A stretch of DNA of 63,624 nucleotides, counting the filler, from Octopus bimaculoides (Eukaryota), in NCBI RefSeq assembly GCF_001194135.2. It is 7 parts of 7 records of this genome, joined end to end, with 100 filler letters (N's around TTAATTAATTAA, not from the genome) between each part and the next. Parts side by side here need not be neighbours in the genome. Positions count along the whole stretch, not along the records: positions 1 to 27,041 come from NC_068987.1; 6 more parts are not named here. One strand, 5' to 3'. The position numbers and the translations under genes were made by a program. Positions 340-27,041 of this stretch are shown piece by piece. Below the pieces are notes generated by a model, which worked only from the letters and a program-made list of their open reading frames with translations, made no database searches and had not been told where the DNA came from. The stretch's first letter is position 1. Each line of letters opens with the position of its first letter.

Positions 340-1045
340 AACATGCTATCTCAGCTCAAATGAGATGGGCTGGACATGTTATTAGAATGAAAGATGAGCG
401 ATTGCTATAGCGTCTTTTTTATGGTGTGCTCAACTTTGGTAAGTGACCACGACATAAGCCGAGGAAAAGGTATAAAGACTGTGAAGGAAAACCTGAAGAA
501 ACTAGATATGAACAAAAGTGATTGGGAAACTGACGCTCTGGATCGGAACAAGTAAATGGGTGCTGTTAAGACTGGTTGTTATGACCGGGATGAAAAGATG
601 GTTCAGCGCTCTGCGCTTAAAAGTGCCTGTCGCAAAGGAACAATTGGAACTGAAATCAACATTGAATATTGGATATGCATTGCGTGCGATCGTGTTTTGT
701 TGTCAAAAGCAGCATACGTGAATCATATGAAGTCAGATGAAAATCGAAATGCCCAGGTAGGTAATAGTCTTAACCCCAGCCACCTCTTACGACTTGTGTC
801 TTATGTCATAAAAGTTGTATGACAAAACCCGGACTTAAAAGACATATGCTAGTTCATGAAAAAACATTCCTACAGAATCAGATTCCAAAGGGCAAAAATA
901 TTGAAGAAATTTGAATATCTGTGACGTGTTTTAAACCGTGTCAGTCAGCAGCTGGTCTTAAAAGTCATCTAGGGCTCATCAGTGGAGAGATTGTGCTGTG
1001 TGATGGGATGTGGTGCGTGCGCTGATGGAACGGCTATCATCATTT
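340..1045 (+). mobile_element. RTE-clade LINE 3' fragment with C-terminal C2H2 zinc fingers (decayed)
   Basis: Translates QLRWAGHVIRMKDERL...LFYG..GK.PRHKPRKRYKD (RTE C-terminus), then CIAC...H and TCVLCHKSCMTKPGLKRHMLVH; stops and frameshifts; ends in an (ATGT)/(TA) tail. Confidence 0.8.
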
Positions 1046-1466
1046 ATGTATGTATGTGTGTATGTACATATGTTATATATATATATATATATATATATNN
1101 NNNNNNNNNNNNNNNNNNNNNNNNNNNNNNNNNNNNNNNNNNNNNNNNNNNNNNNNNNNNNNNNNNNNNNNNNNNNNNNNNNNNNNNNNNNNNNNNNNNN
1201 NNNNNNNNNNNNNNNNNNNNNNNNNNNNNNNNNNNNNNNNNNNNNNNNNNNNNNNNNNNNNNNNNNNNNNNNNNNNNNNNNNNNNNNNNNNNNNNNNNNN
1301 NNNNNNNNNNNNNNNNNNNNNNNNNNNNNNNNNNNNNNNNNNNNNNNNNNNNNNNNNNNNNNNNNNNNNNNNNNNNNNNNNNNNNNNNNNNNNNTATATA
1401 TATATATATATACGTACATACATACATACATACATACACATACACTTAAAATTTAAAGAATGAGGT

Positions 1467-1960: not shown

Positions 1961-2094
1961 TCGATGGTTCTTGTTTAATGTTCAATAAACCATTCATACT
2001 GTTAATCATCGTATTGGTTAACGTATTATTAGGTGAATCAGAGTACTTTCGCTTCTTGGAGACGCTGTTAGCTTGACTTAAATAGTTGGATAAA
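1961..2094 (-). CDS. MYRF: MYRF orthologue, NLS/SUMO-motif exon (LSNYLSQANSVSKKRKYSDSPNNTLTNTMINSMNGLLNIKQEPS)
   Basis: Acceptor atttatttgcag|, donor A|gtaagt; 134 nt. KKRKYSDSP...NG..IKQEP matches vertebrate MYRF KKRKHSESP...NGMIKQEP (sequence recalled from memory). Confidence 0.93.
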
Positions 2095-2171
2095 CTGCAA
2101 ATAAATATGTCAGTGTACATATATATGGATGGCTGTGTGGATGACTTAGCTTTGAAATGAAACAAATGTTA

Positions 2172-2250
2172 TTATGTATTGTTAGGTGAATCAGGGTAAT
2201 TTTTGTTGTTGTTGGAGGCAGCATTGGCTTGACTTAAATAGTTGGATAAA
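2172..2250 (-). pseudogene. Diverged tandem duplicate of the 5' half of the MYRF NLS exon (pseudo-exon or alternative acceptor)
   Basis: About 2178-2314 aligns to 2022-2165, with 28 identical nt across the acceptor. Same frame reads LSNYLSQANAASNNNKNYPDSPNNT*, with TAA at 2172-2174. Confidence 0.8.
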
Positions 2251-2407
2251 CTGCTAATAAATATATTAATGTATATGGATATCTGTGTGAATAACGTATT
2301 GGCCTTGAAACGAAAGACTTGTGAGACCTCTTATGATTAGTATAAGGCCAGAAATTTTGTAGGTGAATGATACTGTGCAACAAAATTTTCTTTCTTTGTC
2401 TTTGTTC

Positions 2408-2805
2408 AGTAAGTGTTATTTCCTATTTGTTTCTATCCAGAAATCAAAGGAAATGATTTCTTCGGACATTACTTTCGTGACCTGGACATCAATGTTTTGA
2501 AACTGATCTATTTTCCATTCCATCTTCGACACATTCAACGCTGAATTGTTGAAGCAGAAATATCATTGTAGAAATATTCTGCTCAATACTACAGATTTGC
2601 TTGTCAGTTGCTTGACCATAACCGCTTAGTTGCTGACAATATGTGCATCTCTGATCATGAACAAGAGTAGTGGTGGAGCATCATAGCCATGTGTTGAAAG
2701 GGATTCTTTGGGATTTGAATAAATGAAACAAAAGCAGAGTTTGAAGGAAATATTAACGATTTTTCATACTTTCTAGGGGTAAGCAAATAGGAAATAACAC
2801 TTGCT
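2408..2805. mobile_element. Candidate MITE
   Basis: 22-bp terminal inverted repeats, 21/22 identical (agtaagtgttatttcctatttg at 2408-2429 vs 2784-2805). No clear TSD. Confidence 0.45.
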
Positions 2806-3668
2806 ATCCAAGGATAAAAAACGTGTTACACAGTGTTATTAGTCAATTGAAATGTCACCAGTGTTTATTTTATCTACACTGGAAGAATGAAAGTCGAAGC
2901 TATTCTCGGGGAGATTTGAACCAAGAACGTAAATGTCTGCAATTTAAATACTGAGAGGAAATTTGTCCAACACTCTAACGATTCTACAAATCCATTGCCG
3001 TTCTGTGCGTTACTTTAGTATTAACTCTGAAATGGGTATTTGGCAATGACTGTAACTGGTCCTGGTTCATTTCAAAATAGGTGAAAAAGATATTGATAAT
3101 TATAGTACCAAGATCAAATCCTTAGAAAGAAAAAAGAGTAAAAGGTGAAACAAGTTACGATATGTTTTGTACTGAGTATCGATCAGAAGTCGATAAAATA
3201 AAGTACTAGTCAGGTACTGGGATCAAATTAAATATACTCACAAAATATTTGTGAGTATTATTTTCAAGTAGTCTGTACTTAAAATATATGGTTAGCTTTG
3301 TCAACAGTCTGTGAGTCCCTTGATTAAGTGTACTTTATAATTAAGGCTTTGAATTTGGTCTGGAGAAATGAATTGCACAAAGGATTGTACCCATGTGGTC
3401 CCTAGAAACCAATGGGATCAATATGGTTGACGGCTTCAGGGAAACACACAGACAGAGATGGAGTCCCAGAAGTATGATATAATGGGGATGGAAAACTGGG
3501 TGAAATGTAATTAGTACGGGGGCCTGGAGTGAGTAGACGTAGCATGGGTGACAAGAAAAAGGAGAGGCGAGTGATTCTCGGCTGGTCCTGAGTGGAGGTG
3601 GTATAACATTAGCCAACTTCGAGCAATGGAAGCCTGTGAAAATACAAATGTAATACGAAAATACTTAC

Positions 3669-4155
3669 TGTCCATAATGCATGAGTGATTGTTGCTGTTG
3701 TTGTTGCTGTTGCTGTTGTTGTTGTTGTGACTGTGGTTGTTGATTCATCAGAGAACAGTTCTGGGGGAGACCCGGGGGAACCGCTTGTATATTTGAGGAC
3801 GAGATCAAAGCTTGTGTAGGGACAGAAGGATTTAGCTTCAGCGGGTCGTTACATAGATAAGAGCTGTAACCCAAGTTCCGAGTCCCACTGACGTTGCCAT
3901 GAGAGACCAGATGCATGTTGCCGGATGGTCCTCTCACTGACGTGTTGCCACCCAAAGGAGGGTACATGTGTTGCTGAGGTGTTTGGGCTATACCATTACG
4001 GAGATCATGCGGTGGTCGTGATGGATGAGGTGAATGGTGTGGCTGCAAGTGAGGCACCACATTGGGGTTATTGAGGTTCTGTTGATGGTGACGCTGTTGC
4101 GGGTTGTTGTGAGGGTTGTGATGAGAAATGCCACCTGGAATATTATGTTTGGTAT
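3669..4155 (-). CDS. MYRF: MYRF orthologue, low-complexity His/Asn/Pro/Gln-rich exon with Q13 tract
   Basis: Acceptor ttttgcttacag|, donor CA|gtaagt; 487 nt, phase 1 to phase 2. Open frame matches track ORF 3665-4183; phases fit both neighbouring exons (G+AT=Asp, CA+T=His). Confidence 0.9.
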
Positions 4156-5209: not shown

Positions 5210-6775
5210 AAGGGGTCCCAGGGACCCCCTAGGGGTCGGCGAGGGATTAAAGGGGGTCGATGATAGCCAAGGGGTCGGTGTGCGAAAGACCAGCTCACCC
5301 AGATTAACTACTCGAAATACTTAGTCAGTGCTATGCTCATCCCTCACATTGATGTTGTCAATTTCAATGAAAGATATTCCAGCAATATGATGCGTTTTTC
5401 ACATTTTCTAACCGTGAAAACAATTTCATAAAAATTGAAAGTTTAATACTGTATATTCGTGCACGTAGTTTTAAATGTAAAAAGTGCGTCATTTTCAATA
5501 GAATTTCTTAATTTGTTGTACATGTAATTATTAGCTAGCATTTTAACTGCCGGCGTCAGTACCCGGTACGCATTCAAGGTATGATACAGTAGGGTAGGAT
5601 ATTAAGATATTTTAAATGAGGAGGTGGCTAAAGGGGGTTGATGGTCGAAAAAGTTTGGCGACTCCTGCGTTACTCCATACTTTTGTAGAGTACAAATTTA
5701 TNNNNNNNNNNNNNNNNNNNNNNNNNNNNNNNNNNNNNNNNNNNNNNNNNNNNNNNNNNNNNNNNNNNNNNNNNNNNNNNNNNNNNNNNNNNNNNNNNNN
5801 NNNNNNNNNNNNNNNNNNNNNNNNNNNNNNNNNNNNNNNNNNNNNNNNNNNNNNNNNNNNNNNNNNNNNNNNNNNNNNNNNNNNNNNNNNNNNNNNNNNN
5901 NNNNNNNNNNNNNNNNNNNNNNNNNNNNNNNNNNNNNNNNNNNNNNNNNNNNNNNNNNNNNNNNNNNNNNNNNNNNNNNNNNNNNNNNNNNNNNNNNNNN
6001 NNNNNNNNNNNNNNNNNNNNNNNNNNNNNNNNNNNNNNNNNNNNNNNNNNNNNNNNNNNNNNNNNNNNNNNNNNNNNNNNNNNNTATATATGTATGGTGG
6101 ATTTGGTAGACCGAAACTGAGAGAAGCCCGTCGTGCGTGTGTGCATGTGTATGTGTGAGCGTGCGTGCGTGTGTGTGTATGTGTGTGTGTACATACATAT
6201 ATGTGCGTGTGTAATAATTAAATATTACACACATTTACATACATTCACTCACGAATACACACAAGGTCACATGTAAGTATACATAGGGCAGCAGTGTTAA
6301 ATTCCATCATACAGCAGATGGGCCATCGACAATTTTGATCGGATAGCATTAGTCGGAGGAGAGGAACCACGGAATGATTGTGGAAAGGGTACAAAAATAA
6401 AGAGTGAAAAATCATAGTGGTGCTCCAGCATGACCACATCCACCTGGCTGAAACCCATAAAAGAATAAAATAATATATGCAAAGGATGGAGACAAGGACA
6501 TATTATTTTGTCAATAGTCAAGAGAGGAATGGCAATTAGTACATAGTGTTTATACTCATTATACAATGACAATACTATTACTAGAACCTTCACTCATAAA
6601 TTCACACAAGAACCTTCACTCATAGGTTCACACACTCAGACACACAAACGCACAAACACCCAATCACATGTAAGCATACAAATACATAAGCAATTGAAAA
6701 CACAATGGACGATAGACGAAGACACAGAACTACTAATAAATAAAAGGACACACAGCAATGAGATGCATAACGTAC

Positions 6776-6834
6776 CTTGCTGTTCGTCTGAAGGGGAGTA
6801 AGGTTCTGAATCTGGAGGGCTGTCTGGAAGGGAG
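6776..6834 (-). CDS. MYRF: MYRF orthologue, 59-nt exon SLPDSPPDSEPYSPSDEQQ
   Basis: Acceptor ctttacttttcag|, donor G|gtacgt; phase 2 to phase 1. Encodes the MYRF-family motif LPDSPPDS(GS)E-YSP. Not in the ORF track. Confidence 0.92.
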
Positions 6835-8546: not shown

Positions 8547-8752
8547 AAGGCGGTGAGCTGGCAGAATGGTTAGTCGGCTAAGCAAAAATGCTTAGAGGCT
8601 TTAGGTTTCGTGTTCAATTCCACTGAGGTTGACTTTGCCTTTTTTCCTTTCGGGGTCAATAAATCAAATACCTTTGAAATACTAGAGTCGATGTAATCGA
8701 CTAGTCCCTTCCATCAAATTTTCAGTCGTTGTACCTTTATAAAAAGGATTAT
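8547..8752 (+). mobile_element. tRNA-headed SINE family B (aaggcggcgagctggcagaa head; gactttgcctttcatcctttcggggtcgataaa core)
   Basis: Copies at 11721-11900, 22925-23121, 23139-23356, 31845-32060 and 52468-52690; reverse-oriented relatives near 2850-3000, 7790-7990, 34135-34350 and 57005-57170. Core resembles the Nin/Deu-type conserved SINE domain (from memory, unverified). Confidence 0.8.
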
Positions 8753-10657: not shown

Positions 10658-11105
10658 ATTAGAATGAAAGATAGTAGGATCCCTAAGTAGATGCTATATG
10701 GGGAACTTGTGAATGGAAAGAGACCCCCGACAGAAACCAAGGTTGCGATTTAAGGACTGTGTCAAGCCCTCATTAAATGCCTGTGATATGCAGGAGACTG
10801 ACAGGGAGAGCACTACGTGTCATCTCCACAGATGGAGGAAGCAGGTTAAGGAGGGGTCCGACACTTTTGAGAGAGTACGTATTCTGCATGAAGAACTTAA
10901 GCGTGCTGCTCGGAAGTGCACTGCTGGTGTAATAAATGGGGTAAGCTTGGTTTGCAATGTTTGCAGTCGTGTATGCTTGTTAAGAGCAGGGCTCATTAAC
11001 CACCAACGGAGCCGCAAGTGCAAAATATAAGTTAGTCCTAGAGCGCACGGTGTTTCTGAAGGTCAGCAATGGTCTTCCTCGGTTACGAGTGGACGGCCGT
11101 CATGT
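10658..11105 (+). mobile_element. RTE-clade LINE 3' end, 5'-truncated, single C2H2-like finger, (ATGT)n tail
   Basis: IRMKDSRIPK*MLYGELVNG..QKPRLRFKD...CNVCSRVCLLRAGLINHQRS; closely similar copy at 48378-48822. Confidence 0.85.
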
Positions 11106-11951
11106 ATGTATGTATGTATGTATGTATGTATGTATGTATGTATGTATGTATGTATGTATGTATGTTTGTATGTATGTAGGTAGGTAGGTAGGTAAGTATA
11201 TGGTGGCAAATTGACAGAATCGTTGGAGCATCGGTTAGAATATCTTGCAGTATTTGTTGTAAGTCTCTGTACTCTGAGTTCAAGTCCATGTTCTAGCGAG
11301 ATATAGAGGTCCCAGATATGCGAACAAAATAGACAAAATAATAGACATACTGATTGATAACTACAGCCATGCATAGAAACATGCATGGCGGAATGCATAC
11401 ACAACAGGTTGGATGTTTATATACATACATACATACATGCATACATGCATACATACATACACATATTTTTGACGTCATAAGAATTTAGAAATCTTGAGAG
11501 ATTGTGAGTTAATTCTATTTTTAGAACGGTGAAACTCCAAGCAGTTAAAGTTAGAAAGAACTGCGAGTAAATTTTGGATTGAAAACCCTTTGGCTAGAGA
11601 AAAATCGAAGGCTGCCCGTGGGACACGAACCCACATCTGTAAACATAACAGTCCTCGACATTTTCTATCGGAAAGCTTTTTAACCCCAATATTTACATGC
11701 TATTAGTTATGGCTTTATTGAAGGCGGCGGGCTGGAAGAATCGCTAGGATCTCGTCTGTTTTTACGTTCTGAGTTCAAATTCCACCGACGTCGACTTGGC
11801 CTTTCATCCTTTTCGCGTCGATAAAATAAGTACCAGCTGAGCACTGGGGTCGATGTAATCGACTATCCCCGAAATTGCTGGCCTTGTGCCAAAATTTGAA
11901 ATTTGAAATTATTTATAGCTTTATTTGCGTCGAGTTTTACAGTTCTCTCCC

Positions 11952-12217: not shown

Positions 12218-12508
12218 GTTGCATTGTTCTTAAAGCTGATGACATTTGAATTTGCAGCAGTAATGCAGTACATGCCTGCAGCCGTTGCTGTAGTAACTGC
12301 CGCTGCACAATTTGAGGGGTGGCCGTGATGAATGTCAAGAGGATGTAGACCCTGCTGTGATGAGTTGATCTGTAATTGATTGTGATTGCCACCACTGAGA
12401 GATCCGCCGGCTCCATGGTTCGCACACGAGGATGAGTCGGCTCCGACCAGACTCTCTTGTAAACCGTTATTGTATGTCACAGCTGAGATTAAGTCACCAG
12501 GGAAATAC
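12218..12508 (-). CDS. MYRF: MYRF orthologue, N-terminal exon (YFPGDLISAV...NNAT)
   Basis: Acceptor tgtttcatttcag| and donor AC|gtaaat; 291 nt, phase 2 to phase 2, no stops. Joins the 6834 exon in frame (AC+C=Thr). YFPGDLISA resembles vertebrate MYRF CFPDISA. Confidence 0.8.
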
Positions 12509-13379: not shown

Positions 13380-14202
13380 ACACATTTATTGCCTTCAAAG
13401 TATCCTCCATTTGAAACAAATCGGTCGAGGTGCGTTTTCTAACATTCGAAGCAGTGTTGGAACTCTTGCGAAGTGATGCCTTTTAACGCCTCTGTCTTGG
13501 TTTCCTTCACCTCTTCCACATTTGCAAATTCCGTAGCACCGGTGATGATCTTCGAAAATAGGTCCGGATCAACTTCCATTTGTTCTTTCAATTCACGACA
13601 CGCATTCAGTCATGACTGCTTTTGACCTTCCGTGAGCAAGCGAGGCACAAATTTTACTGCAGCTGTTTTCATTCGCAATTCCTCTCACAAAATTCGTTGG
13701 CAAGAACTCCAGGACAAACCAAACTTATCAACAAGTTCGAAAATTGCTCGGTGATGGTCCTCCAAGATCAGTTCATGAATTTTCATATTTTCATTCGTTC
13801 GGGAGGTCGATGGTCGTCCTACACAAAGTTGGTCTTCAAGTGAAAAGTGGTCATTCCTAAAGCGTGAAAACCACTCGCAAACTTGTGTTTTGCTCATAGT
13901 AGCGGCCTTGTAAGCTGTTAAAAAGATGACAACTGTTTCGGCCGCCGTTTTCCCCACCAAAAAACAGAATTTCACGTAAGCACGCTCTTCCTTCGTTTCA
14001 CCCATCGCAAAAATCGATGAACTTGGGAGAAGCACTATAAAACAAAGGCGCATCACGTGGCAGTACGACCCCACTGAGCAACGCCGGTCGGCAGACTGAA
14101 GGCCGAAGGTCGCACCAAGTGGCTTCTAGCGGCGGAAGCCTGAACTACAACGGTCTTGTCCCACAGAGAACGTTTCCAGTTACTTTTCGTTACTCCCTCG
14201 TA
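13380..14202 (-). mobile_element. Mariner transposon, internally deleted
   Basis: 5' TIR TACGAGGGAGTAACGAAAAG at 14202-14183. ORF 13685-14074 has ERAYVKFCFLVGKTAAET...WFSRF...GRPSTS, followed by KFVPRLLT. IITG joins directly to the C-terminal EEVK..EAL..I...CF...YFEG near 13535-13540. Confidence 0.9.
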
Positions 14203-14484: not shown

Positions 14485-15881
14485 AATATCCATTACAACG
14501 AGTATTGACTATTGCAGAATGTTTTTCAGATACAACCAACTACTGTGTCATTTCCTCCTCTTCCTATCTTTTTCCTCCTTCTTCGCTTTCTACGATTCTT
14601 TCTCAAACTGTGTATGGGTATATTTCCTTTACTCATTGTCTGCCATCAAGCCCAGTGTGTGCACTTACCTTGCACCTATCTCTCTGTATCTATCTTATAC
14701 TCTTTTAACCCTCTCTCTACCCCTCTCTCTCTCTCTGCGATATAAAGCGTGATTGGAGAAATCAACCAACTAAACAACATTTGTATCGGCTATTATATAA
14801 ACACACACACACACACATGCACGCATATGGAGAGAGAAGGAGAGAAAAAGAAAGATAGATATACGTATAAACACATACACACATACACACATACACACTC
14901 ACTAATGCATATGTGCAAATCGTCTCTTGATTTGAATTTTTGATTTCATTTTGATGTCATATCNNNNNNNNNNGTCTCTTGATTTGAATTTTTGATTTCA
15001 TTTTGATGTCATATCCTCAATGCATGGTCAGAATGAACAAATAGTTAAAGAAAGAGGTGTATATATGTATGTAATACATGTATGTATGTATGTATGTATA
15101 TGTATGACTGTAAATCTGTATCTAATTCTACATATATATAAATTTTTTTTCGAACTATTAACCTCAGCTTTATAAATAATAAAAAAAACTCTTAATATTT
15201 AAATCTACACTACATTTCGATCGGTTTGATATCCGAGCATCATCAGGTGTCTTATTCTCTGATATGTATATGACTGTATTCGAACTAAGAATATTTATTT
15301 CTGAAGTAATTGTAGGAATTCTCTTACACAAGAATTCTCTTACAGTTAGTGGAAAACAGCATAACTACAAATAGTTTTAAAATGAAGACTCCTTGTTCAA
15401 ATACGGCCCTTTACTCTGCATTAGGTTATCAGATAAATTCGTTCGTTTTTAAACTTTTTTTCTTTATAACATTTCCAATATTATTTCAATTGAAACACAC
15501 ATATACATAAAAAAAAAACTTATCGTAATATTTTGTTTTTTCTTTATGTACCTCTATACTTCCTTTACAAATTTTGCTTATCCGTATAGCTATAGAATGT
15601 CATGTAGAAAAAACCGAATGAATTTATCTGACAAAATAATAGATATCCAGGAATATGATGCCTGCTGACGATCGCTGATCGAATCCATTGAAACGTAATC
15701 CAGATTGCAATCCTGTAGCTAATAATTCAGCTCAGATACTGGGTTAATAAATACTGTTTATATGTATGTATGTATGCATGTATGTATGCATACATGTATG
15801 CTTGTACGCATGCGTGCATAAATATATTATCTATATATGCATATAGATATAAGTTTATATATGTGTGTATATATAGATATA

Positions 15882-15918
<37 letters not shown>

Positions 15919-17847
15919 ACACATATGTATGTATAGTCTGTCATACCGGCCATGATGAAATACCACAAGGTAAAGAAAATACGTATTCGCCTTTATATAT
16001 TTAATCCTTTATATTGAACACTCAATATTTCATCTATTCAATAAGACATATTCCATATATTCAAAAGACATTCAATACTTTATTTCATTGTACCATCCAT
16101 TTTTATTTTATATTATATATTGTATATTCCATATTCTATATCCCACATTGGTTTTGCAGGAATATAAATAAAACAAAAAAAAACAGACAGAGTTGGAACT
16201 CTTTTAAACAAAATAATATATTCCTCTATACACAATCATACAAAACCCCTTTTTTTGTATTTATTTTTACTCTCTCANNNNNNNNNNNNNNNNNNNNNNN
16301 NNNNNNNNNNNNNNNNNNNNNNNNNNNNNNNNNNNNNNNNNNNNNNNNNNNNNNNNNNNNNNNNNNNNNNNNNNNNNNNNNNNNNNNNNNNNNNNNNNNN
16401 NNNNNNNNNNNNNNNNNNNNNNNNNNNNNNNNNNNNNNNNNNNNNNNNNNNNNNNNNNNNNNNNNNNNNNNNNNNNNNNNNNNNNNNNNNNNNNNNNNNN
16501 NNNNNNNNNNNNNNNNNNNNNNNNNNNNNNNNNNNNNNNNNNNNNNNNNNNNNNNNNNNNNNNNNNNNNNNNNNNNNNNNNNNNNNNNNNNNNNNNNNNN
16601 NNNNNNNNNNNNNNNNNNNNNNNNNNNNNNNNNNNNNNNNNNNNNNNNNNNNNNNNNNNNNNNNNNNNNNNNNNNNNNNNNNNNNNNNNNNNNNNNNNNN
16701 NNNNNNNNNNNNNNNNNNNNNNNNNNNNNNNNNNNNNNNNNNNNNNNNNNNNNNNNNNNNNNNNNNNNNNNNNNNNNNNNNNNNNNNNNNNNNNNNNNNN
16801 NNNNNNNNNNNNNNNNNNNNNNNNNNNNNNNNNNNNNNNNNNNNNNNTGGTGTAAATAACAAAAGGATGTATTAGTATGACGCTCGGGAATACGGAAAGT
16901 CTTTGACGTTTCGAGCTACGCTCTTCAACAGAAAGAATACGGAGACAAGGAGAAAAACACGGAGAAAAAAATTGAATAGTGTTCAGTCAACGGTCAATCA
17001 TAGTAATCAATCATAGTATATATATATATATATATATTATACACACACACACGCACACACACATATATATATAATATAATATAATATAATATACACATAT
17101 GTCGGCGCATAGGCGTTTGACAAAGACAGAAAGAAGTACTCAATATACAATAGTATAGTTCATGCACTTTTTAAAGACTGATGCTTCACTCTGTAGCTCT
17201 CTGAGTTCACTTTTCAGTCTTTTGTGGTGGGAATACGAAATTTAGGTGTCATAAATGAAAATATGTATGTATGTGTTGTTTGCAAAAACAAAACAAACAA
17301 AAAAAAGCAAAAAAAAAAAAAAAAAACAGAAAGGGCTGAATGTAACTGCGGAGTCTCAACTTAGTTGTCTTTCTCAAGAATGGGTACTCAAATGCTTAAA
17401 TGTATTAAGGGAACCGCCAATAAATGCTTGACTGTTTTTCTTTTTCATATATAACTCTATATAAATACAAACATTTATACATACATACATACACAAACAC
17501 GTGCGCGCACACACACGGGCACACACACGCACGCACACACATATGTGTATATGCATGTATATTACACACACACACACACATATATGTATATATATATATA
17601 TATATATATACATAGAGACGCGAAGTTATGATACAGTGCATGAACAGCAAACAACCAGTTACAGTAGATCTCATTTTATGTATGCGTTCTACGTATCTAC
17701 GTATGTATGTATATGTGTGTGGTGTGTGTGTATATACATATATAAACACCTCGCACGTGTGTGTGCGTGTGTGCATGCGTGTGTGTGAGATCGTGTGTGT
17801 TTGTGATTTTGTGTTCATTTGTGTGTACGTTCCAAAACTGTACTTAC

Positions 17848-17879: not shown

Positions 17880-19214
17880 ATAATAATTATAAGGAAAAGT
17901 GACCGCCTGATTAAATAATGTCCAGCTTAACCCTTCTTGTTTCTGTAGTGGTTATCTCAGCCAACAGTCTCTGCTGTAGATGCCGATACACTATCACCCA
18001 GATTCAGTGCTTGGCTCTATTGCACACCGCCCGTTTTCAACTAGCATTTTGCTTTTCTTTTCTATACTTGTCTTTGACGCAACACGTACTATCGTTGCGT
18101 GTGCCAGCACGAGTTTGTTTTATCCGTACGACTTGTATATCGCTAACAGCTTAAGTAGTCCTTATAGCGTACCCGGCTTGACGTATGTACACTAATGTAC
18201 AGTTTAAATATGCTTGGGTGTCGCAATAAGTGTGGTCGGGTGGTTGAGTGTCTTGAGTAAGTTTACTCTTTAACTGAAGTGAAAATCTTTGTCTTGTTTT
18301 TTTTATTTTATTTTTCACTTACACGCGGTCACTTCATATACATGCACGTATATACTTAACCACAAATGCACAAGTATATACACGCATGCACATAACATAC
18401 ATACATACAAACATATATGTGCGTATGTATATATATAATTATGTATATGCGTGTCTATGCGTATGTTATATATATGTATGTATGCATGTATAAATATGTG
18501 TGTATGTATGTATGTATGTATATATATTCACAAGTACATCAAGATTGTAGTTTGAAGCAGATTTTGGCTTTAGTTGGTTATATATGTATGTATATATGTA
18601 TATAAGATATATATATATATATGTATGTATATATAGATATGTATGTATGTACATATATGTGTATGTATGTATGTATGTATATGTATGTACGTATGTATGT
18701 ATATGTGTGTATGTATGTATAGATATGTATATATATTTACAAGTACATCAAGATTGTAGTTTGAAGCAGATTTTGGCTTTAGTTGGTTATATACGTATGT
18801 ATATAAGATATATATATATATGTATGTATAGATATGTATATATGTGTGTGTATGTATGTATGTATGTGTATGTATGTGTATGTATGTATGTATATATATG
18901 TGTGTATGTATGTATGTACGTATGTATGTATATGTGTGTATGTATGTNNNNNNNNNNNNNNNNNNNNNNNNNNNNNNNNNNNNNNNNNNNNNNNNNNNNN
19001 NNNNNNNNNNNNNNNNNNNNNNNNNNNNNNNNNNNNNNNNNNNNNNNNNNNNNNNNNNNNNNNNNNNNNNNNNNNNNNNNNNNNNNNNNNNNNNNNNNNN
19101 NNNNNNNNNNNNNNNNNNNNNNNNNNNNNNNNNNNNNNNNNNNNNNTCCCTTTCTCTTACCGTCTCCTACCTCACCCGTTACTGTTGTAAACCTTTAGTT
19201 GAAATATAATAACA

Positions 19215-19379: not shown

Positions 19380-21270
19380 CATGTACCCTTGTTTTGTTTT
19401 CTTCTTTCTTATCCCTACAGAAAATAGCACTTGTTTCGGCACCACCGCCCCCCCCACTAACAACAACGACAACGATAGTAACAATAGACAACATGAACAC
19501 TCATACCACTATCATCAACATCACCAAAGCTTTTGTGAACAACATTAGCATAGCAGCCAAATCTCCCTCAATTTATACTTTACGGTTCTATTTAATCCTT
19601 AAACGACAAGGTAGTCGTTTAGATCATTTCGATCAGGTTTGACCTTGGGCTAAACAACACCAACACCACCACCATCTCCAAACCATGTCTAGTTACACCA
19701 ATATCACTACCACCACCACCACCAACGTGACCACCACCACCACCACCGCAACAACGACGACGACGACGACGACCACCACCACTGCCTCCGCTACCGCCGC
19801 CACCTCCGCCGCCGCTGCCGCCACCACCACCACNNNNNNNNNNNNNNNNNNNNNNNNNNNNNNNNNNNNNNNNNNNNNNNNNNNNNNNNNNNNNNNNNNN
19901 NNNNNNNNNNNNNNNNNNNNNNNNNNNNNNNNNNNNNNNNNNNNNNNNNNNNNNNNNNNNNNNNNNNNNNNNNNNNNNNNNNNNNNNNNNNNNNNNNNNN
20001 NNNNNNNNNNNNNNNNNNNNNNNNNNNNNNNNNNNNNNNNNNNNNNNNNNNNNNNNNNNNNNNNNNNNNNNNNNNNNNNNNNNNNNNNNNNNNNNNNNNN
20101 NNNNNNNNNNNNNNNNNNNNNNNNNNNNNNNNNNNNNNNNNNNNNNNNNNNNNNNNNNNNNNNNNNNNNNNNNNNNNNNNNNNNNNNNNNNNNNNNNNNN
20201 NNNNNNNNNNNNNNNNNNNNNNNNNNNNNNNNNNNNNNNNNNNNNNNNNNNNNNNNNNNNNNNNNNNNNNNNNNNNNNNNNNNNNNNNNNNNNNNNNNNN
20301 NNNNNNNNNNNNNNNNNNNNNNNNNNNNNNNNNNNNNNNNNNNNNNNNNNNNNNNNNNNNNNNNNNNNNNNNNNNNNNNNNNNNNNNNNNNNNNNNNNNN
20401 NNNNNNNNNNNNNNNNNNNNNNNNNNNNNNNNNNNNNNNNNNNNNNNNNNNNNNNNNNNNNNNNNNNNNNNNNNNNNNNNNNNNNNNNNNNNNNNNNNNN
20501 NNNNNNNNNNNNNNNNNNNNNNNNNNNNNNNNNNNNNNNNNNNNNNNNNNNNNNNNNNNNNNNNNNNNNNNNNNNNNNNNNNNNNNNNNNNNNNNNNNNN
20601 NNNNNNNNNNNNNNNNNNNNNNNNNNNNNNNNNNNNNNNNNNNNNNNNNNNNNNNNNNNNNNNNNNNNNNNNNNNNNNNNNNNNNNNNNNNNNNNNNNNN
20701 NNNNNNNNNNNNNNNNNNNNNNNNNNNNNNNNNNNNNNNNNNNNNNNNNNNNNNNNNNNNNNNNNNNNNNNNNNNNNNNNNNNNNNNNCACATACATACA
20801 TACATGCATAATACATACATACATATATACATACAAACACACACACATACATACATACATACATACATACATACATAATACAAACACACACACATACACA
20901 CACACATGCATACATAATACATAATACATACATACATATATACATACAAACACACACACATATATACATACATACATACATACATACATACATACAAGCA
21001 CACATACATACATACATACATACAAACACACACACATACATACATACATACATACATACATACATAAATATATAAATATATATATATGTGTGTGTGTGTG
21101 TGTATATATAAATACACAGGCATATTTTCTCTTCTACTCTCACATGCAAATTTACAGGTACACACACATGTTTTCTCTCTCTCCCTCTCTTCTTTCTCTC
21201 TCTCCCTTTCTTCTTTCTCTCTATCTCTCATATGTATGTATGCATATATATCTATATCTCTCTCCCTCCC

Positions 21271-21972: not shown

Positions 21973-23792
21973 AAGCAAATTTAAAATGAAAAAAGCAAAT
22001 AAAACGAAGGTATGGAGATTAAATANNNNNNNNNNNNNNNNNNNNNNNNNNNNNNNNNNNNNNNNNNNNNNNNNNNNNNNNNNNNNNNNNNNNNNNNNNN
22101 NNNNNNNNNNNNNNNNNNNNNNNNNNNNNNNNNNNNNNNNNNNNNNNNNNNNNNNNNNNNNNNNNNNNNNNNNNNNNNNNNNNNNNNNNNNNNNNNNNNN
22201 NNNNNNNNNNNNNNNNNNNNNNNNNNNNNNNNNNNNNNNNNNNNNNNNNNNNNNNNNNNNNNNNNNNNNNNNNNNNNNNNNNNNNNNNNNNNNNNNNNNN
22301 NNNNNNNNNNNNNNNNNNNNNNNNNNNNNNNNNNNNNNNNNNNNNNNNNNNNNNNNNNNNNNNNNNNNNNNNNNNNNNNNNNNNNNNNNNNNNNNNNNNN
22401 NNNNNNNNNNNNNNCCTCCTCCCCTACCCCGCCCCTGTTATTATGAGGATCGTCTGCTCTCGAATACCGTGGATCGCCATCTTGGTCTTACCGTGCTGTC
22501 CTTACACATTTACAACACTTTAAGTCTGTCCATTCCTTGTTATCCATCTACATAATTTCTGGTTTTCCCTTTTCTTATTTTGCCTTAATTTTGCCTTCTA
22601 TAGATTTCTGTAAATCTAAGTCTGTAAACCTCTATATACTTTGTAAGCCATTTTCGTTTTCTGTAAGTCTCAGTAAACAATTTTTCTAGTTAAGTCGAAG
22701 TACAACAGTTTTTCTTTATTTGTTGGAGTCAAATAAAATTTTCTTAAATTTTCCCACTTTTAGGTCTAAATCATTGGTTTATACCCTGCCTATGATATTT
22801 TCAAAAAACTTCTATAGGCGTAGGCAAGGCTCAGCGGTTTAAAAAAGCTCACTTTACAACTTCGTGGTTTTGGGTTCAGCGCCACTGCGCAGCATCTTCG
22901 GCAAGAGTCTTTTATTATATCCCCGAGCTGGCAGAACCGTTAAGGTGCCAGAAAAAAATGTTTAGCGGCAGTTCTTCCGATTTTACGTTTTGTGTTCAAA
23001 TGCCGCCGGGGTTGACTTTGGCTTTCATCCATTAGGAGTCGATAAAATAAGTACCTGTTGAACACTGGGGTCGACTTAACCCCACTCAGAAATTGCTGGC
23101 CCTGTTCCAAAATTTGAAACTAATATTTAATGCATATTAAGATGCCGAGCTGGTAGAATCACCAGCCCACTGGACAAAATACTTAACGGTATTTCGCCCG
23201 TCTTTACGTTCTGAGATCAAATTCCACCAAGGTCGACTTTGCCTTTCGTCCTTTCGGGGTCGATAAAATAAGTAGCAATGAAGCACTGGGGTCGATATAA
23301 TAGATTCGCTCCCTCCTTGCAAACATGCTGGCCTTATGCCAACATTCAAAATCAATAATTAATGTACGTTGATGTAAAGTATGTTTGATATTTTTCAAAT
23401 GTCTTTGTAGCACAACTTATATCAGGAAAACGTCCCCACACGTTACTTTTAAACATGAGCAACACACATTTAGAGCCCTATGGGGCTCTAAACTATCCTT
23501 AACATAGCTGTGACTGCATCCCCAAAATTGACCCGTCTCTTCAGCCTTCAACGATTACTGACTTCCCACAAAGCATTAGTACGGAAGGAGGCAATTAGGT
23601 GTGGCTGTTTGGATGCAGACGATCTGGCATAGCTGGCTGGACATTGAACTTATTTTGGCGAGAGTACGTTTTGACAGAGGAAACAAACACCACACATGCA
23701 CGCGCACGCAGAAATATACATATACAGATAGAGAGAGTGAGGGAGAGACATTATGTTTACATACAAATATAACTAGATACTTACACACATAA

Positions 23793-25095: not shown

Positions 25096-25928
25096 CTTTT
25101 CTCTACTTGAGCCGAGGCTATAGTAGAAGACACTTGCCCAAAGTGCCACGCAGTGGAACTGAACCTGGAATCATGTGGTTGGGAAGCAAACTTCTTACCA
25201 CACAGCCACACCTGCGCCTATATGTGTGTGTGTGTGTGTGTGTGTNNNNNNNNNNNNNNNNNNNNNNNNNNNNNNNNNNNNNNNNNNNNNNNNNNNNNNN
25301 NNNNNNNNNNNNNNNNNNNNNNNNNNNNNNNNNNNNNNNNNNNNNNNNNNNNNNNNNNNNNNNNNNNNNNNNNNNNNNNNNNNNNNNNNNNNNNNNNNNN
25401 NNNNNNNNNNNNNNNNNNNNNNNNNNNNNNNNNNNNNNNNNNNNNNNNNNNNNNNNNNNNNNNNNNNNNNNNNNNNNNNNNNNNNNNNNNNNNNNNNNNN
25501 NNNNNNNNNNNNNNNNNNNNNNNNNNNNNNNNNNNNNNNNNNNNNNNNNNNNNNNNNNNNNNNNNNNNNNNNNNNNNNNNNNNNNNNNNNNNNNNNNNNN
25601 NNNNNNNNNNNNNNNNNNNNNNNNNNNNNNNNNNNNNNNNNNNNNNNNNNNNNNNNNNNNNNNNNNNNNNNNNNNNNNNNNNNNNNNNNNNNNNNNNNNN
25701 NNNNNNNNNNNNNNNNNNNNNNNNNNNNNNNNNNNNNNNNNNNNNNNNNNNNNNNNNNNNNNNNNNNNNNNNNNNNNNNNNNNNNNNNNNNNNNNNNNNN
25801 NNNNNNNNNNNNNNNNNNNNNNNNNNNNNNNNNNNNNNNNNNNNNNNNNNNNNNNNNNNNNNNNNNNNNNNNNNNNNNNNNNNNNNNNNNNNNNNNNNNN
25901 NNNNNNNNNNNNNNNATGTATATGTATA

Positions 25929-25968
<40 letters not shown>

Positions 25969-27041
25969 TGTGTGTGTGTGTGTGTATGTGTGCGTATGTG
26001 TGCGTGTGTGTATCCGACATACACGTCGGGCTTCCACACAATTCTCGTCTGCCAAATTCACTCACAGGGCATTGGTTGAACCGGATCTATAGTAGATGAT
26101 AATACTCAAGATGTTCCGCAATGAGATTGAACCTGAAACCACGTGGCTTCAAAGCAATCTTCTTTACCACAGTCAGATCGGCACTTATATGGAATATTGT
26201 CTACCTTTTTTTGATTCTCCAATGTTCTATGTCCTAATGTCTGTCGGTGGACTTTGCCACTGATCATCATACTTTACCGGGTTTTCGGTAAAGTAGATTT
26301 CTGTTATATCGTGAGATTTATTTCATTAAACCAATTCCCTCATACTAACCATGGCTACGCCGTATTTCTTTCCGTCACTGCTTACCTATGATAGAGTGTC
26401 ATTCAGTTTGTAATGCGGTAGAGTACAAAGTGAGGGAGATTTAGTTGCTAGTTCAAACATTTCCAGCGACCACGTTGCTTGTCACTGCAGTTCTTTCTGG
26501 TGGTGGTGGTGTTAAGATTGTGGTAACAATGCTGTTGTAGCTGCTGATGATGATGGTGATGAAGAGGCGGAGGACGAAAATGATAATGATGACGATTATG
26601 ATTATAATGGTGATGATAATGATGAGGATGATCATGATTATGATGGTGATGAGGATGATGATGATCATGATTATGATGGTGATGATGATGATGAAGACTG
26701 TGTTGGTGGTGGTGGAGTTCCTGATAGTGAAGAAGGGATGGTGGTGTGACCATTGTTCGTTTCACAACAGTTTTTCACCTCCTACCATCTCTTTCATCAC
26801 CTTTAATTCACTTTCCATTAATCTCTCTCTCTCTCTCTTTCACTTACGCACGCACACACACACGTATACGCACACGTACACACACAGAGTTTCTCACTTT
26901 CACCCTTTCTTTTCTTTTTCGTACACCTCCCCACTCATCCCAACCTCTCCTTTCTCTCATGTGTAGCAAGAGCGTAAGAGAGTACCCTATTGTTTTTCTA
27001 AATGACTGAGGTCATGTCTCAAGTAGTTGATCGCCCTCAGT

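What the first reader, a model, noticed from the sequence alone, without database searches (positions are those of the whole stretch)
2022..2314. Tandem duplicate of the MYRF NLS exon that keeps acceptor and frame but has erased the NLS and ends in a stop
Seen: a copy about 156 bp upstream in transcript direction retains the AG acceptor (2251-2252, as TAGCAG) and 28 identical nt. It keeps the frame through a 3-nt insertion, but SVSKKRKYSDSP becomes AASNNNKNYPDSP, then TAA at 2172-2174. The spliceosome meets this acceptor first. Inference: an alternative 3' splice site giving an NLS-less truncated or NMD-targeted transcript could act as a dosage switch for MYRF. Divergence looks concentrated in the basic codons, although simple AAC-repeat drift could also explain this.
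Basis: partly seen in the sequence, partly recalled or inferred. Interest (0 to 1): 0.75.

Follow-up and report, generated by a model that had tools for sequence, protein, structure and literature searches.

The report
Decaying partial duplicate of MYRF exon
An intron of a mollusc-type MYRF gene holds an old, half-length tandem copy of the next exon's front end; the copy still looks like a splice acceptor but is decaying like junk DNA, so it is most likely an ordinary duplication relic and not a dosage switch.

Summary
On the minus strand, 2315-2168 is a diverged tandem copy (76% identity over 146 nt, E 8e-24, offset 150-156 nt) of 2162-2017. That segment is the last ~66 nt of the intron plus the first ~78 nt of the 134-nt exon 2094-1961. 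The exon is the MYRF NLS1 exon: its best hits are molluscan MYRF proteins carrying NDT80, Peptidase_S74 and MYRF_ICA domains. The copy keeps an AG (TAGCAG, 2256-2251), a pyrimidine tract and a branch-point-like TTAAT. It keeps the frame, reads AASNNNKNYPDSP where the exon reads SVSKKRKYSDSP, and ends in TAA TAA.

The proposed dosage switch has no support here. The copy never had a donor. Its exon part has diverged as much as its intron part (0.208 against 0.203). The frame-keeping insertion lies in an (AAC)3 run, which points to slippage, and all three CpGs have decayed. Divergence is not concentrated on the KKRK codons (P=0.53), only over a ~30-nt patch (P=0.03). Use of the acceptor would give a 290-nt exon with a stop 211 nt before its donor. 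Such a transcript would be unproductive, not an NLS-less protein. RNA evidence and related cephalopod genomes could not be reached. One oddity remains: a 37/38-nt identical core around the acceptor (P≈0.02).

The parts
2168..2315 (-). Upstream (psi) copy of the tandem duplication: ~66 nt of intron plus a partial pseudo-exon
   Evidence: blastn 2315-2176 against 2162-2023, 76%/146 nt, E 8e-24. Local alignment. The repeat finder D1-D3 with spacings 156/153/150.
2017..2162 (-). Source copy: the last ~68 nt of the intron plus the first ~78 nt of the real NLS exon
2251..2256 (-).
2265..2269 (-). Branch-point-like TTAAT (yUnAy) of the copy. Its A is at -16, homologous to the real CTGAC, from which it differs by three transitions.
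   Evidence: ungapped register, spacing 156
2172..2250 (-). Pseudo-exon reading frame: (H)LSNYLSQANAASNNNKNYPDSPNNT, then TAA at 2174-2172. A second TAA follows at 2171-2169.
2205..2213 (-). (AAC)3 run that replaces the Lys codons and contains the 3-nt insertion (slippage signature)
1961..2094 (-). Real MYRF NLS1 exon (134 nt; acceptor TTGCAG 2100-2095, donor GT 1960-1959)
   Evidence: translation. phmmer hits to molluscan MYRF. Same exon boundary and phase in Candidula and an ENA contig.
2046..2057 (-). KKRK codons AAGAAGCGAAAG (NLS1 core; also a purine-rich tract)
   Evidence: Human NLS1 is K245KRK248 (PMC3742443).
2109..2113 (-). Likely branch point CTGAC of the real acceptor (A at -16)
   Evidence: consensus match only, inferred
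3669..4155 (-). Upstream MYRF exon (His/Pro/Gln-rich, ends CA|GTAAGT). Its donor would pair with either acceptor.
   Evidence: weak similarity to Pinctada MYRF around QQHMYPP
6776..6834 (-). MYRF exon encoding SLPDSPPDSEPYSPSDEQQ
   Evidence: tblastn 87.5% identity over 16 aa to Pinctada MYRF; splice sites and phase
12218..12508 (-). Tentative further upstream MYRF exon (YFPGDLISAVTYNNG...)
   Evidence: Open frame with fitting acceptor, donor and phase. Resemblance to CLPDDGIPAIAY of Patella seen by eye only; tblastn did not report it.

Best explanation
This is a lineage-specific partial tandem duplication of about 150 bp that straddles the 3' splice site of the MYRF NLS1 exon.

Origin (inferred): a replication-slippage or unequal-exchange event copied the last ~66 nt of the intron and the first ~78 nt of the exon, and placed the copy directly upstream, inside the intron. 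The 3' 40% of the exon and its donor were not copied, so it was never a complete second exon.

Since then (partly shown, partly inferred): the copy has decayed like unconstrained DNA.
- About 20% divergence in both its intron-derived and exon-derived parts.
- CpG loss.
- An AAC microsatellite grown over the Lys codons, which accounts for the 'in-frame' 3-nt insertion.
- Two stop codons.

What remains is a decoy 3' splice site with a branch-point-like motif, a pyrimidine tract and TAGCAG.

Consequence if used (inferred, not observed): the exon becomes 290 nt long with a stop 211 nt before its donor. That transcript would be an unproductive, NMD-type product or would encode a truncated N-terminal fragment without NLS1, DNA-binding domain or trimerisation domain. 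I expect such use to be rare splicing noise, not a regulated switch.
For: - Anatomy and significance of the duplication.
- No usable donor in the copy: the four GTs between 2250 and 2095 match CAG|GTAAGT at only 2-4 of 9 positions, against 6-7 of 9 for the four real donors.
- Equal divergence of the exon-derived and intron-derived parts: 16 events in 77 columns against 13 in 64.
- dN/dS 0.32 on 14 changes. About 0.5 is expected if one copy is free and the other constrained (9.2 nonsynonymous changes expected, 8.5 observed).
- The insertion lies inside AACAACAAC.
- The three CpGs of the real segment (AGCGTC, AGCGAA, TACGTT) are all non-CpG in the copy.
- The densest 12-nt window of differences is not unusual (P=0.53).
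- No RNA structure signal (z -0.33) and no Rfam family.
- The real acceptor position and phase are the ancestral ones, and no second copy exists near the exon in Solemya, Candidula, an ENA contig or a Logan contig.
- Unannotated intronic copies of neighbouring exons are common in animal genes (4,027 intronic targets in human; PMC9013439).
- An independent local amplification of the other end of the same exon in Pinctada shows that such events happen readily in mollusc genomes.
Against: - The core around the copy's acceptor is 37/38 identical to the real one (2264-2227 against 2108-2071). The 28-nt perfect run is nominally unusual for 20% divergence (P=0.022, post hoc). This could reflect constraint on the decoy acceptor or gene conversion.
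- By simple consensus criteria the decoy acceptor is almost as good as the real one, so appreciable use cannot be excluded.
- No transcript data and no sister-species sequence could be examined.
Confidence: 0.7

Rival explanations
1. One reading: the copy's acceptor is a regulated alternative 3' splice site. Its use diverts MYRF pre-mRNA into a stop-containing, NMD-targeted transcript and thereby sets MYRF dosage (unproductive splicing).
For: - Branch-point-like TTAAT, a pyrimidine tract (6/10 against 7/10) and a CAG are all retained at homologous positions.
- The frame from the upstream donor is kept, and the stop lies 211 nt before the next junction.
- The core around the acceptor is 37/38 identical, and the 28-nt perfect run has P=0.022.
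- It is transcribed before the real acceptor.
Against: - There is no evidence of use.
- Overall divergence is neutral-like.
- The frame is irrelevant for an NMD switch, and slippage explains why it is kept.
- The purine-rich AAGAAGCGAAAG tract next to the real acceptor is gone in the copy.
- T-to-A at -5 weakens the tract and adds a competing TAG.
- Known regulatory poison exons are typically highly conserved, whereas this element is absent from the other molluscs examined.
Confidence: 0.07
2. Relic of a once-functional pair of mutually exclusive NLS exons made by tandem exon duplication, one of which later died.
For: Adjacent, same-strand homologous exon sequence with its own acceptor and the same phase. 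Tandem exon duplication is the usual origin of mutually exclusive exons (PMC9013439).
Against: - Homology ends mid-exon at TAAC. Five nt later the second unit begins (…TAAC ATTTG TTTCATTTC…), so the duplicated unit never included the exon's 3' end or a donor.
- There is no competing docking/selector pairing above background.
Confidence: 0.05
3. The acceptor core of the copy is kept similar to the real one for a non-coding role, for example as a loading platform or decoy that modulates recognition of the weak real acceptor. Alternatively it is simply being homogenised by gene conversion between the tandem copies.
For: The 37/38 identical core is centred on the acceptor while the flanks differ by 25-40%. 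Short conversion tracts between close tandem repeats are well known (general knowledge).
Against: The P value is only about 0.02-0.04 and was chosen post hoc. There is no independent evidence. A role as a 'platform' has no precedent I can cite for this arrangement.
Confidence: 0.08
4. Assembly artefact or chance similarity.
For: The window is a gapped draft with 8 N-runs.
Against: E is 8e-24. The copies differ by 24% with indels, whereas artefactual duplications are near-identical and abut gaps. The nearest gap is 1099-1394, about 600 nt away.
Confidence: 0.02

Closest known systems
Unannotated intronic copies from tandem exon duplication (Letunic, Copley & Bork 2002 as cited in, and extended by, Ivanov & Pervouchine 2022, PMC9013439)
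   Same: A same-strand, nearby, diverged copy of an exon lying in the adjacent intron, with flanking intron sequence and a splice site copied along.
   Different: Only the 5' 58% of the exon was copied. There is no donor, the frame is closed by two stops, and no mutually exclusive arrangement is possible.
Unproductive splicing / AS-NMD through poison exons or alternative 3' splice sites (as in SR-protein genes; own knowledge, not checked in a paper here)
   Same: If used, the upstream acceptor would insert a premature stop more than 50 nt upstream of an exon junction.
   Different: Regulatory cases are defined by observed, regulated use and strong conservation. Neither is shown here, and the divergence looks neutral.
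Pseudoexons / decoy splice sites in introns (reviewed in PMC3800588 and PMC8819188, listed but not read)
   Same: An intronic sequence with consensus-like splice signals that is normally ignored by the spliceosome.
   Different: Its origin is known here: it is a duplicate of the authentic site, so it starts from near-identical signal strength instead of chance resemblance.
NAGNAG tandem acceptors (own knowledge)
   Same: The copy's acceptor reads TAGCAG (2256-2251).
   Different: The motif arose by a T-to-A change in a non-functional copy. The authentic acceptor is TTGCAG.
Pinctada imbricata MYRF locus: 45-bp array of exon end plus donor (found here)
   Same: The same exon of the same gene in another mollusc carries a local tandem duplication that includes a splice site.
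   Different: It involves the donor side, about 13 copies, a 45-bp in-frame unit and ~90% identity. It is much younger or is being homogenised. The event is independent.

Membership tests
MYRF gene (identity of the host gene) | NLS1 exon motif KKRK-[YF]-S-[DE]-SP ... IKQEP located N-terminal of the DNA-binding domain | tested here: met
   phmmer of the 44-aa exon against 1.84e9 representatives gave 8 hits (E 6e-7 to 6e-4, 55-69% identity), and every one that carries a source name is a molluscan MYRF. Human NLS1 is KKRK 245-248 (PMC3742443).
MYRF gene (identity of the host gene) | NDT80/PhoG DNA-binding domain plus Peptidase_S74/ICA domain in the same protein | not testable with these tools
   Those exons lie beyond position 1 of the window. 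The domains are present in the hit proteins P0002, P0003 and P0007, not in the window.
MYRF gene (identity of the host gene) | Conserved N-terminal LPDSPPDSEPYSP motif upstream, on the same strand and in the right order | tested here: met
   Exon 6834-6776 encodes SLPDSPPDSEPYSPSD, 87.5% identical to Pinctada MYRF.
Tandem exon duplication giving mutually exclusive exons | Adjacent homologous copy on the same strand in the same gene | tested here: met
Tandem exon duplication giving mutually exclusive exons | Both copies are complete exons with acceptor and donor, and similar length and phase | tested here: not met
   Homology stops after ~78 of 134 exon nt. The best GT in the copy matches the donor consensus at 4 of 9 positions.
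Tandem exon duplication giving mutually exclusive exons | Open reading frame through both copies | tested here: not met
   TAA TAA at 2174-2169
Tandem exon duplication giving mutually exclusive exons | Competing RNA pairings (one docking site, one selector per copy) | tested here: not met
   The candidate 3063-3076 pairs with the two unit starts at -13.9 and -13.2 kcal/mol. The median best partner for any 26-nt window of this intron is -14.3.
Regulatory unproductive splicing (AS-NMD) | Consensus splice signals at the alternative site | tested here: met
   TTAAT at -19..-15, 6/10 pyrimidines at -14..-5, and CAG. Consensus matching only; no trained splice-site model was available.
Regulatory unproductive splicing (AS-NMD) | Premature stop more than ~50 nt upstream of a downstream exon junction | tested here: met
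   TAA at 2174-2172, exon end at 1961: 211 nt
Regulatory unproductive splicing (AS-NMD) | Observed, regulated use in transcripts | not testable with these tools
   No RNA-seq or transcript collection for this organism was reachable.
Regulatory unproductive splicing (AS-NMD) | Conservation across species above the neutral level | not testable with these tools
   No close relative was reachable. The within-genome proxy is inconclusive: the overall level is neutral, but there is a 28-nt identical run with P=0.022.
Neutrally decaying duplicate (pseudo-exon) | Disabling lesions relative to the functional copy | tested here: met
   All four basic residues are changed (K, K and K to N, R to K), S is changed to P, and there are two stops.
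Neutrally decaying duplicate (pseudo-exon) | Exon-derived part diverges as fast as intron-derived part, with no coding constraint | tested here: met
   0.208 against 0.203 events per column. dN/dS 0.32 on 14 changes, compatible with ~0.5 expected for one free and one constrained copy. Small numbers.
Neutrally decaying duplicate (pseudo-exon) | Lineage-specific, absent from more distant relatives | tested here: met
   No second copy within the held loci of Solemya (L003), Candidula (L004), an ENA contig (L005) or a Logan contig (L001).

The most novel reading that the evidence does not exclude
The decoy acceptor is kept by selection (the 37/38-nt identical core) and is used as a regulated poison 3' splice site that tunes MYRF output. 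Molluscan MYRF would then repeatedly acquire duplicated splice sites around its NLS exon for this purpose: acceptor side here, and about 13 donor copies in Pinctada.
Probability: 0.05. Interest if true: 0.5.

Novelty: new member of a known kind. Interest (0 to 1): 0.2.

Why it matters
If the decoy acceptor were used and regulated, it would be a clear case of a gene-dosage control born from a small tandem duplication of a splice-site boundary. The host gene is a dosage-sensitive, membrane-tethered transcription factor. As the evidence stands, it is an ordinary relic. Its practical value is for annotation: gene predictors and RNA-seq aligners may pick the wrong acceptor or a false isoform here. 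It also gives a datable marker, at ~20% divergence, for comparing related genomes.

Tried and rejected
1. Finding the same gene in close relatives.
- The search for homologous proteins with the two-exon peptide found nothing. The exon alone gave no candidate.
- A Patella MYRF DNA-binding-domain query returned 346 MYRF proteins but no cephalopod, and every one of the 120 listed was at most ~650 aa.
- That index also missed P0001 although it shares six 5-mers with the query, so its negatives are weak.
- Exact look-ups of window ORFs found nothing.
- A metagenome scan for the 24-nt core found nothing.
- The source organism was therefore not identified, and 'octopod' is unverified.

2. Docking/selector RNA pairing. 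An inverted repeat (2151-2164 with 3063-3076) suggested that both unit starts could pair with one upstream site. Duplex energies are at the intron-wide background, so this was rejected.

3. A local RNA structure covering both copies: z-score -0.33. Rfam: no hit in the window.

4. A cassette 'poison exon' with its own donor. Rejected because there is no donor-like GT.

5. Alternative splicing at this exon in other molluscs. The Patella isoforms X1-X4 differ only at the N-terminus, not at the NLS exon.

6. A dispersed repeat or transposon as the origin. The unit has no other copy in the window; only its TA/CA-rich stretch hits microsatellites.

7. Plus strand of 2022-2314: no ORF of 40 aa or more.

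8. Correction: an earlier count said 39/40 identical for the core. The checked figure is 37/38.

Full report
**What is there**

Read on the minus strand, the window carries part of a gene whose exons run from high to low coordinates. The exon at 2094-1961 follows the acceptor TTGCAG (2100-2095) and precedes the donor CGA|GTAAGT (1960). It encodes LSNYLSQANSVSKKRKYSDSPNNTLTNTMINSMNGLLNIKQEPS.

Exactly 156 nt upstream in transcript direction, a second acceptor-like site TAGCAG (2256-2251) is followed by LSNYLSQANAASNNNKNYPDSPNNT and then TAA TAA (2174-2169). The upstream exon 4155-3669 ends CA|GTAAGT. CA+T therefore gives His at either acceptor, and the frame is the same.

**It is a real duplication, but a partial one**

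blastn of either copy against the 27-kb window finds the other at 76% identity over 146 nt (E 8e-24). Otherwise it finds only microsatellite-like matches to the TA/CA-rich intron stretch. A whole-window repeat search shows no other non-simple tandem pair.

The unit runs from TTTC[A/G]TTTCAA, about 66 nt upstream of the acceptor, to TAAC, about 78 nt into the exon. After the copy's TAAC come five bases (ATTTG), and then the second unit starts. The 134-nt exon was thus only 58% copied, and its donor was not copied.

Between the decoy acceptor and the real one, the four GT dinucleotides match CAG|GTAAGT at 2-4 of 9 positions. The four real donors of this gene match at 6-7 of 9. A separate cassette exon is therefore not on offer. 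The only possible event is a 5' extension of the real exon to 290 nt.

**Gene identity**

An exhaustive phmmer search with the 44-aa exon against 1.84 billion representatives gave eight hits (E 6e-7 to 6e-4, 55-69% identity).
- The long hits carry NDT80_PhoG, Peptidase_S74, MYRF_ICA and MRF_C2 domains.
- Their sources name them myelin regulatory factor of Pinctada, Patella, Lottia and Plakobranchus, or give no function name (Solemya, Candidula).
- In all of them the motif KK[RM]K-[YF]-[ST]-[DE]-SP...IKQEP lies just N-terminal of the DNA-binding domain.
- A second conserved MYRF motif, SLPDSPPDSEPYSPSD, is encoded by exon 6834-6776 on the same strand, with fitting splice phases.
- In human MYRF the homologous KKRK (245-248) is NLS1. 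Deleting it alone only partly blocks nuclear entry, because a second NLS lies in the DNA-binding domain (PMC3742443).

The host gene is therefore a mollusc-type MYRF. I could not confirm that the organism is an octopod.

**How the copy has evolved**

I aligned the two copies (intron part ungapped near the acceptor, exon part by codons) and counted each substitution or indel as one event.

| Measure | Result |
|---|---|
| Intron-derived part | 13 events in 64 columns (0.203) |
| Exon-derived part | 16 events in 77 columns (0.208) |
| dN/dS (Nei-Gojobori, 24 shared codons) | 0.32 on 14 changes |
| Densest 12-nt window (size of the KKRK codons) | P=0.53 |
| Densest 30-nt window (ANSVSKKRKYS) | P=0.03 |
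| Longest perfect run, 28 nt | P=0.022 |

If the copy were under coding constraint, its exon part should be the more similar of the two. It is not. With the real exon constrained and the copy free, dN/dS of about 0.5 is expected (9.2 nonsynonymous changes expected, 8.5 observed), so there is no sign of constraint on the copy.

Three features explain the heavily changed patch without any selection to 'erase' the NLS.
- The 3-nt insertion that 'keeps the frame' lies within AACAACAAC (2213-2205). That is what slippage of a new trinucleotide repeat produces.
- All three CpGs of the real segment are non-CpG in the copy.
- The real exon cannot change its basic residues, so all amino-acid differences fall on the copy.

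**The one thing that does not look uniform**

From -14 to +24 around the acceptor, the copies are 37/38 identical (2264-2227 against 2108-2071). The 28-nt perfect run has P=0.022 under shuffling of the differences. That test is post hoc. Chance, a short gene-conversion tract between tandem copies, and constraint on the decoy acceptor all remain possible. Only an outgroup can separate them.

**Could the decoy acceptor work?**

By consensus it could.
- TTAAT (2269-2265) sits at the same -16 position as the real CTGAC (2113-2109), from which it differs by three transitions. Both fit yUnAy.
- The tract at -14..-5 is ATATTTATTA against ATATTTATTT.
- Both sites end in CAG.

There are three differences against the decoy.
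- The weaker branch motif.
- The T-to-A change at -5, which also creates a NAGNAG (TAGCAG).
- The loss of the purine-rich AAGAAGCGAAAG tract that lies 37 nt inside the real exon. In the copy this is CAACAACAACAAAAA. That this tract acts as a splicing enhancer is my inference and is untested.

If the decoy were used, the first stop would lie 211 nt upstream of the exon's donor. The transcript would be a textbook NMD substrate. If it were stable, it would encode only the N-terminal region without NLS1, DNA-binding domain or trimerisation domain. The 'erased NLS' therefore has no consequence of its own.

**Comparative evidence**

I could not reach any close relative.

In the more distant loci I could fetch, the acceptor position and phase of the NLS exon, read directly in Candidula L004 and the ENA contig L005, match the real site here. 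No second copy of the exon lies nearby in any of the four (Solemya L003, Candidula L004, ENA contig L005, Logan contig L001). The duplication is therefore lineage-specific and the downstream acceptor is the ancestral one.

Pinctada imbricata shows an independent event at the other end of the same exon. The last 38 nt of the exon plus the donor (…AAACAGGAGCCTAATG|GTAAGTC) are amplified as a 45-bp array of about 13 units. The unit is in frame (15 codons). The annotated protein reads through the first donor and uses the second (L002 27821-28406). This shows how readily such local duplications arise in mollusc genomes. It is not evidence for function.

**Other ideas tested**
- A docking/selector pairing of the kind that drives mutually exclusive splicing was suggested by an inverted repeat. 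It is no stronger than background.
- The region has no unusual fold and no Rfam match.
- Patella MYRF isoforms do not differ at this exon.

**Verdict**

The most likely reading (about 0.7) is a decaying partial tandem duplication that left a decoy 3' splice site in the intron. This is a common kind of object in animal genes (PMC9013439).

Junction counts from RNA-seq and the orthologous intron of sister species would settle the matter. Interest is low (0.2). If the decoy proved to be a conserved, regulated poison acceptor (about 0.05), it would be moderately interesting.

Noticed in passing
L002 27821-28406 (Pinctada imbricata GCA_033119305.1, VSWD01000005.1): The 3' end of the MYRF NLS exon together with its 5' splice site (AATGGTGTACTCAATATAAAACAGGAGCCTAATG|GTAAGTC) is amplified as a 45-bp tandem array of about 13 units at ~90% identity. 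The unit is in frame. Most units keep GGTAAGT, two have GATAAGT, and some carry stops. The annotated protein (KAK3102622.1) contains one extra unit.
   Followed up: partly
window 2392-2443 / 2770-2821 and 1472-1515 / 1628-1671: Two pairs of long inverted repeats (52 nt at 75% complementarity, 326 nt apart; 44 nt at 80%, 112 nt apart) in the introns flanking the NLS exon. They look like small MITE-type elements.
   Followed up: no
window 13685-14074 (-): A 129-aa ORF with the HTH_48 domain of Mos1-type mariner transposases (E 1.4e-8). This is a transposon remnant inside a MYRF intron.
   Followed up: partly
window 8587-8700, 11749-11862, 22970-23083, 23191-23304: Four copies (63-83% identical) of a ~114-nt dispersed repeat. 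ORFs over three of them share a motif (LFYR..KDE..S.P.WNL.SERK). Probably a SINE-like family.
   Followed up: no
window 3690-3735 (-), within exon 4155-3669: The MYRF exon upstream of the finding ends in a run of 14 Gln codons (mixed CAA/CAG) and is rich in His and Pro. This low-complexity stretch may have spoiled the first homology search.
   Followed up: no
window 26448-26765 (-): A 105-aa ORF made largely of His (HHHHHHHNHDHHHPHHHH...). It is unclear whether it is low-complexity noise or an upstream coding exon. No MYRF N-terminal exon (MDVLGEE...LEDYI) was found in the window.
   Followed up: no
window 1099-1394, 5702-6084, 16278-16847, 18948-19146, 19834-20788, 22026-22414, 25246-25915 (and 14964-14973): Eight N-runs (3,472 N inside the piece), mostly flanked by TGTA/CA microsatellites. 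The piece comes from a gapped draft scaffold. None of the gaps touches the duplication.
   Followed up: no
window 556-822 (+) and 10713-11030 (+): Two ORFs with a C..C...H...H zinc-finger-like motif (CIACDRVLLSKAAYVNHMKS; CNVCSRVCLLRAGLINHQRS). One gives a sub-threshold zf-C2H2_jaz hit (E 8e-4). Probably fragments of one transposon family.
   Followed up: partly
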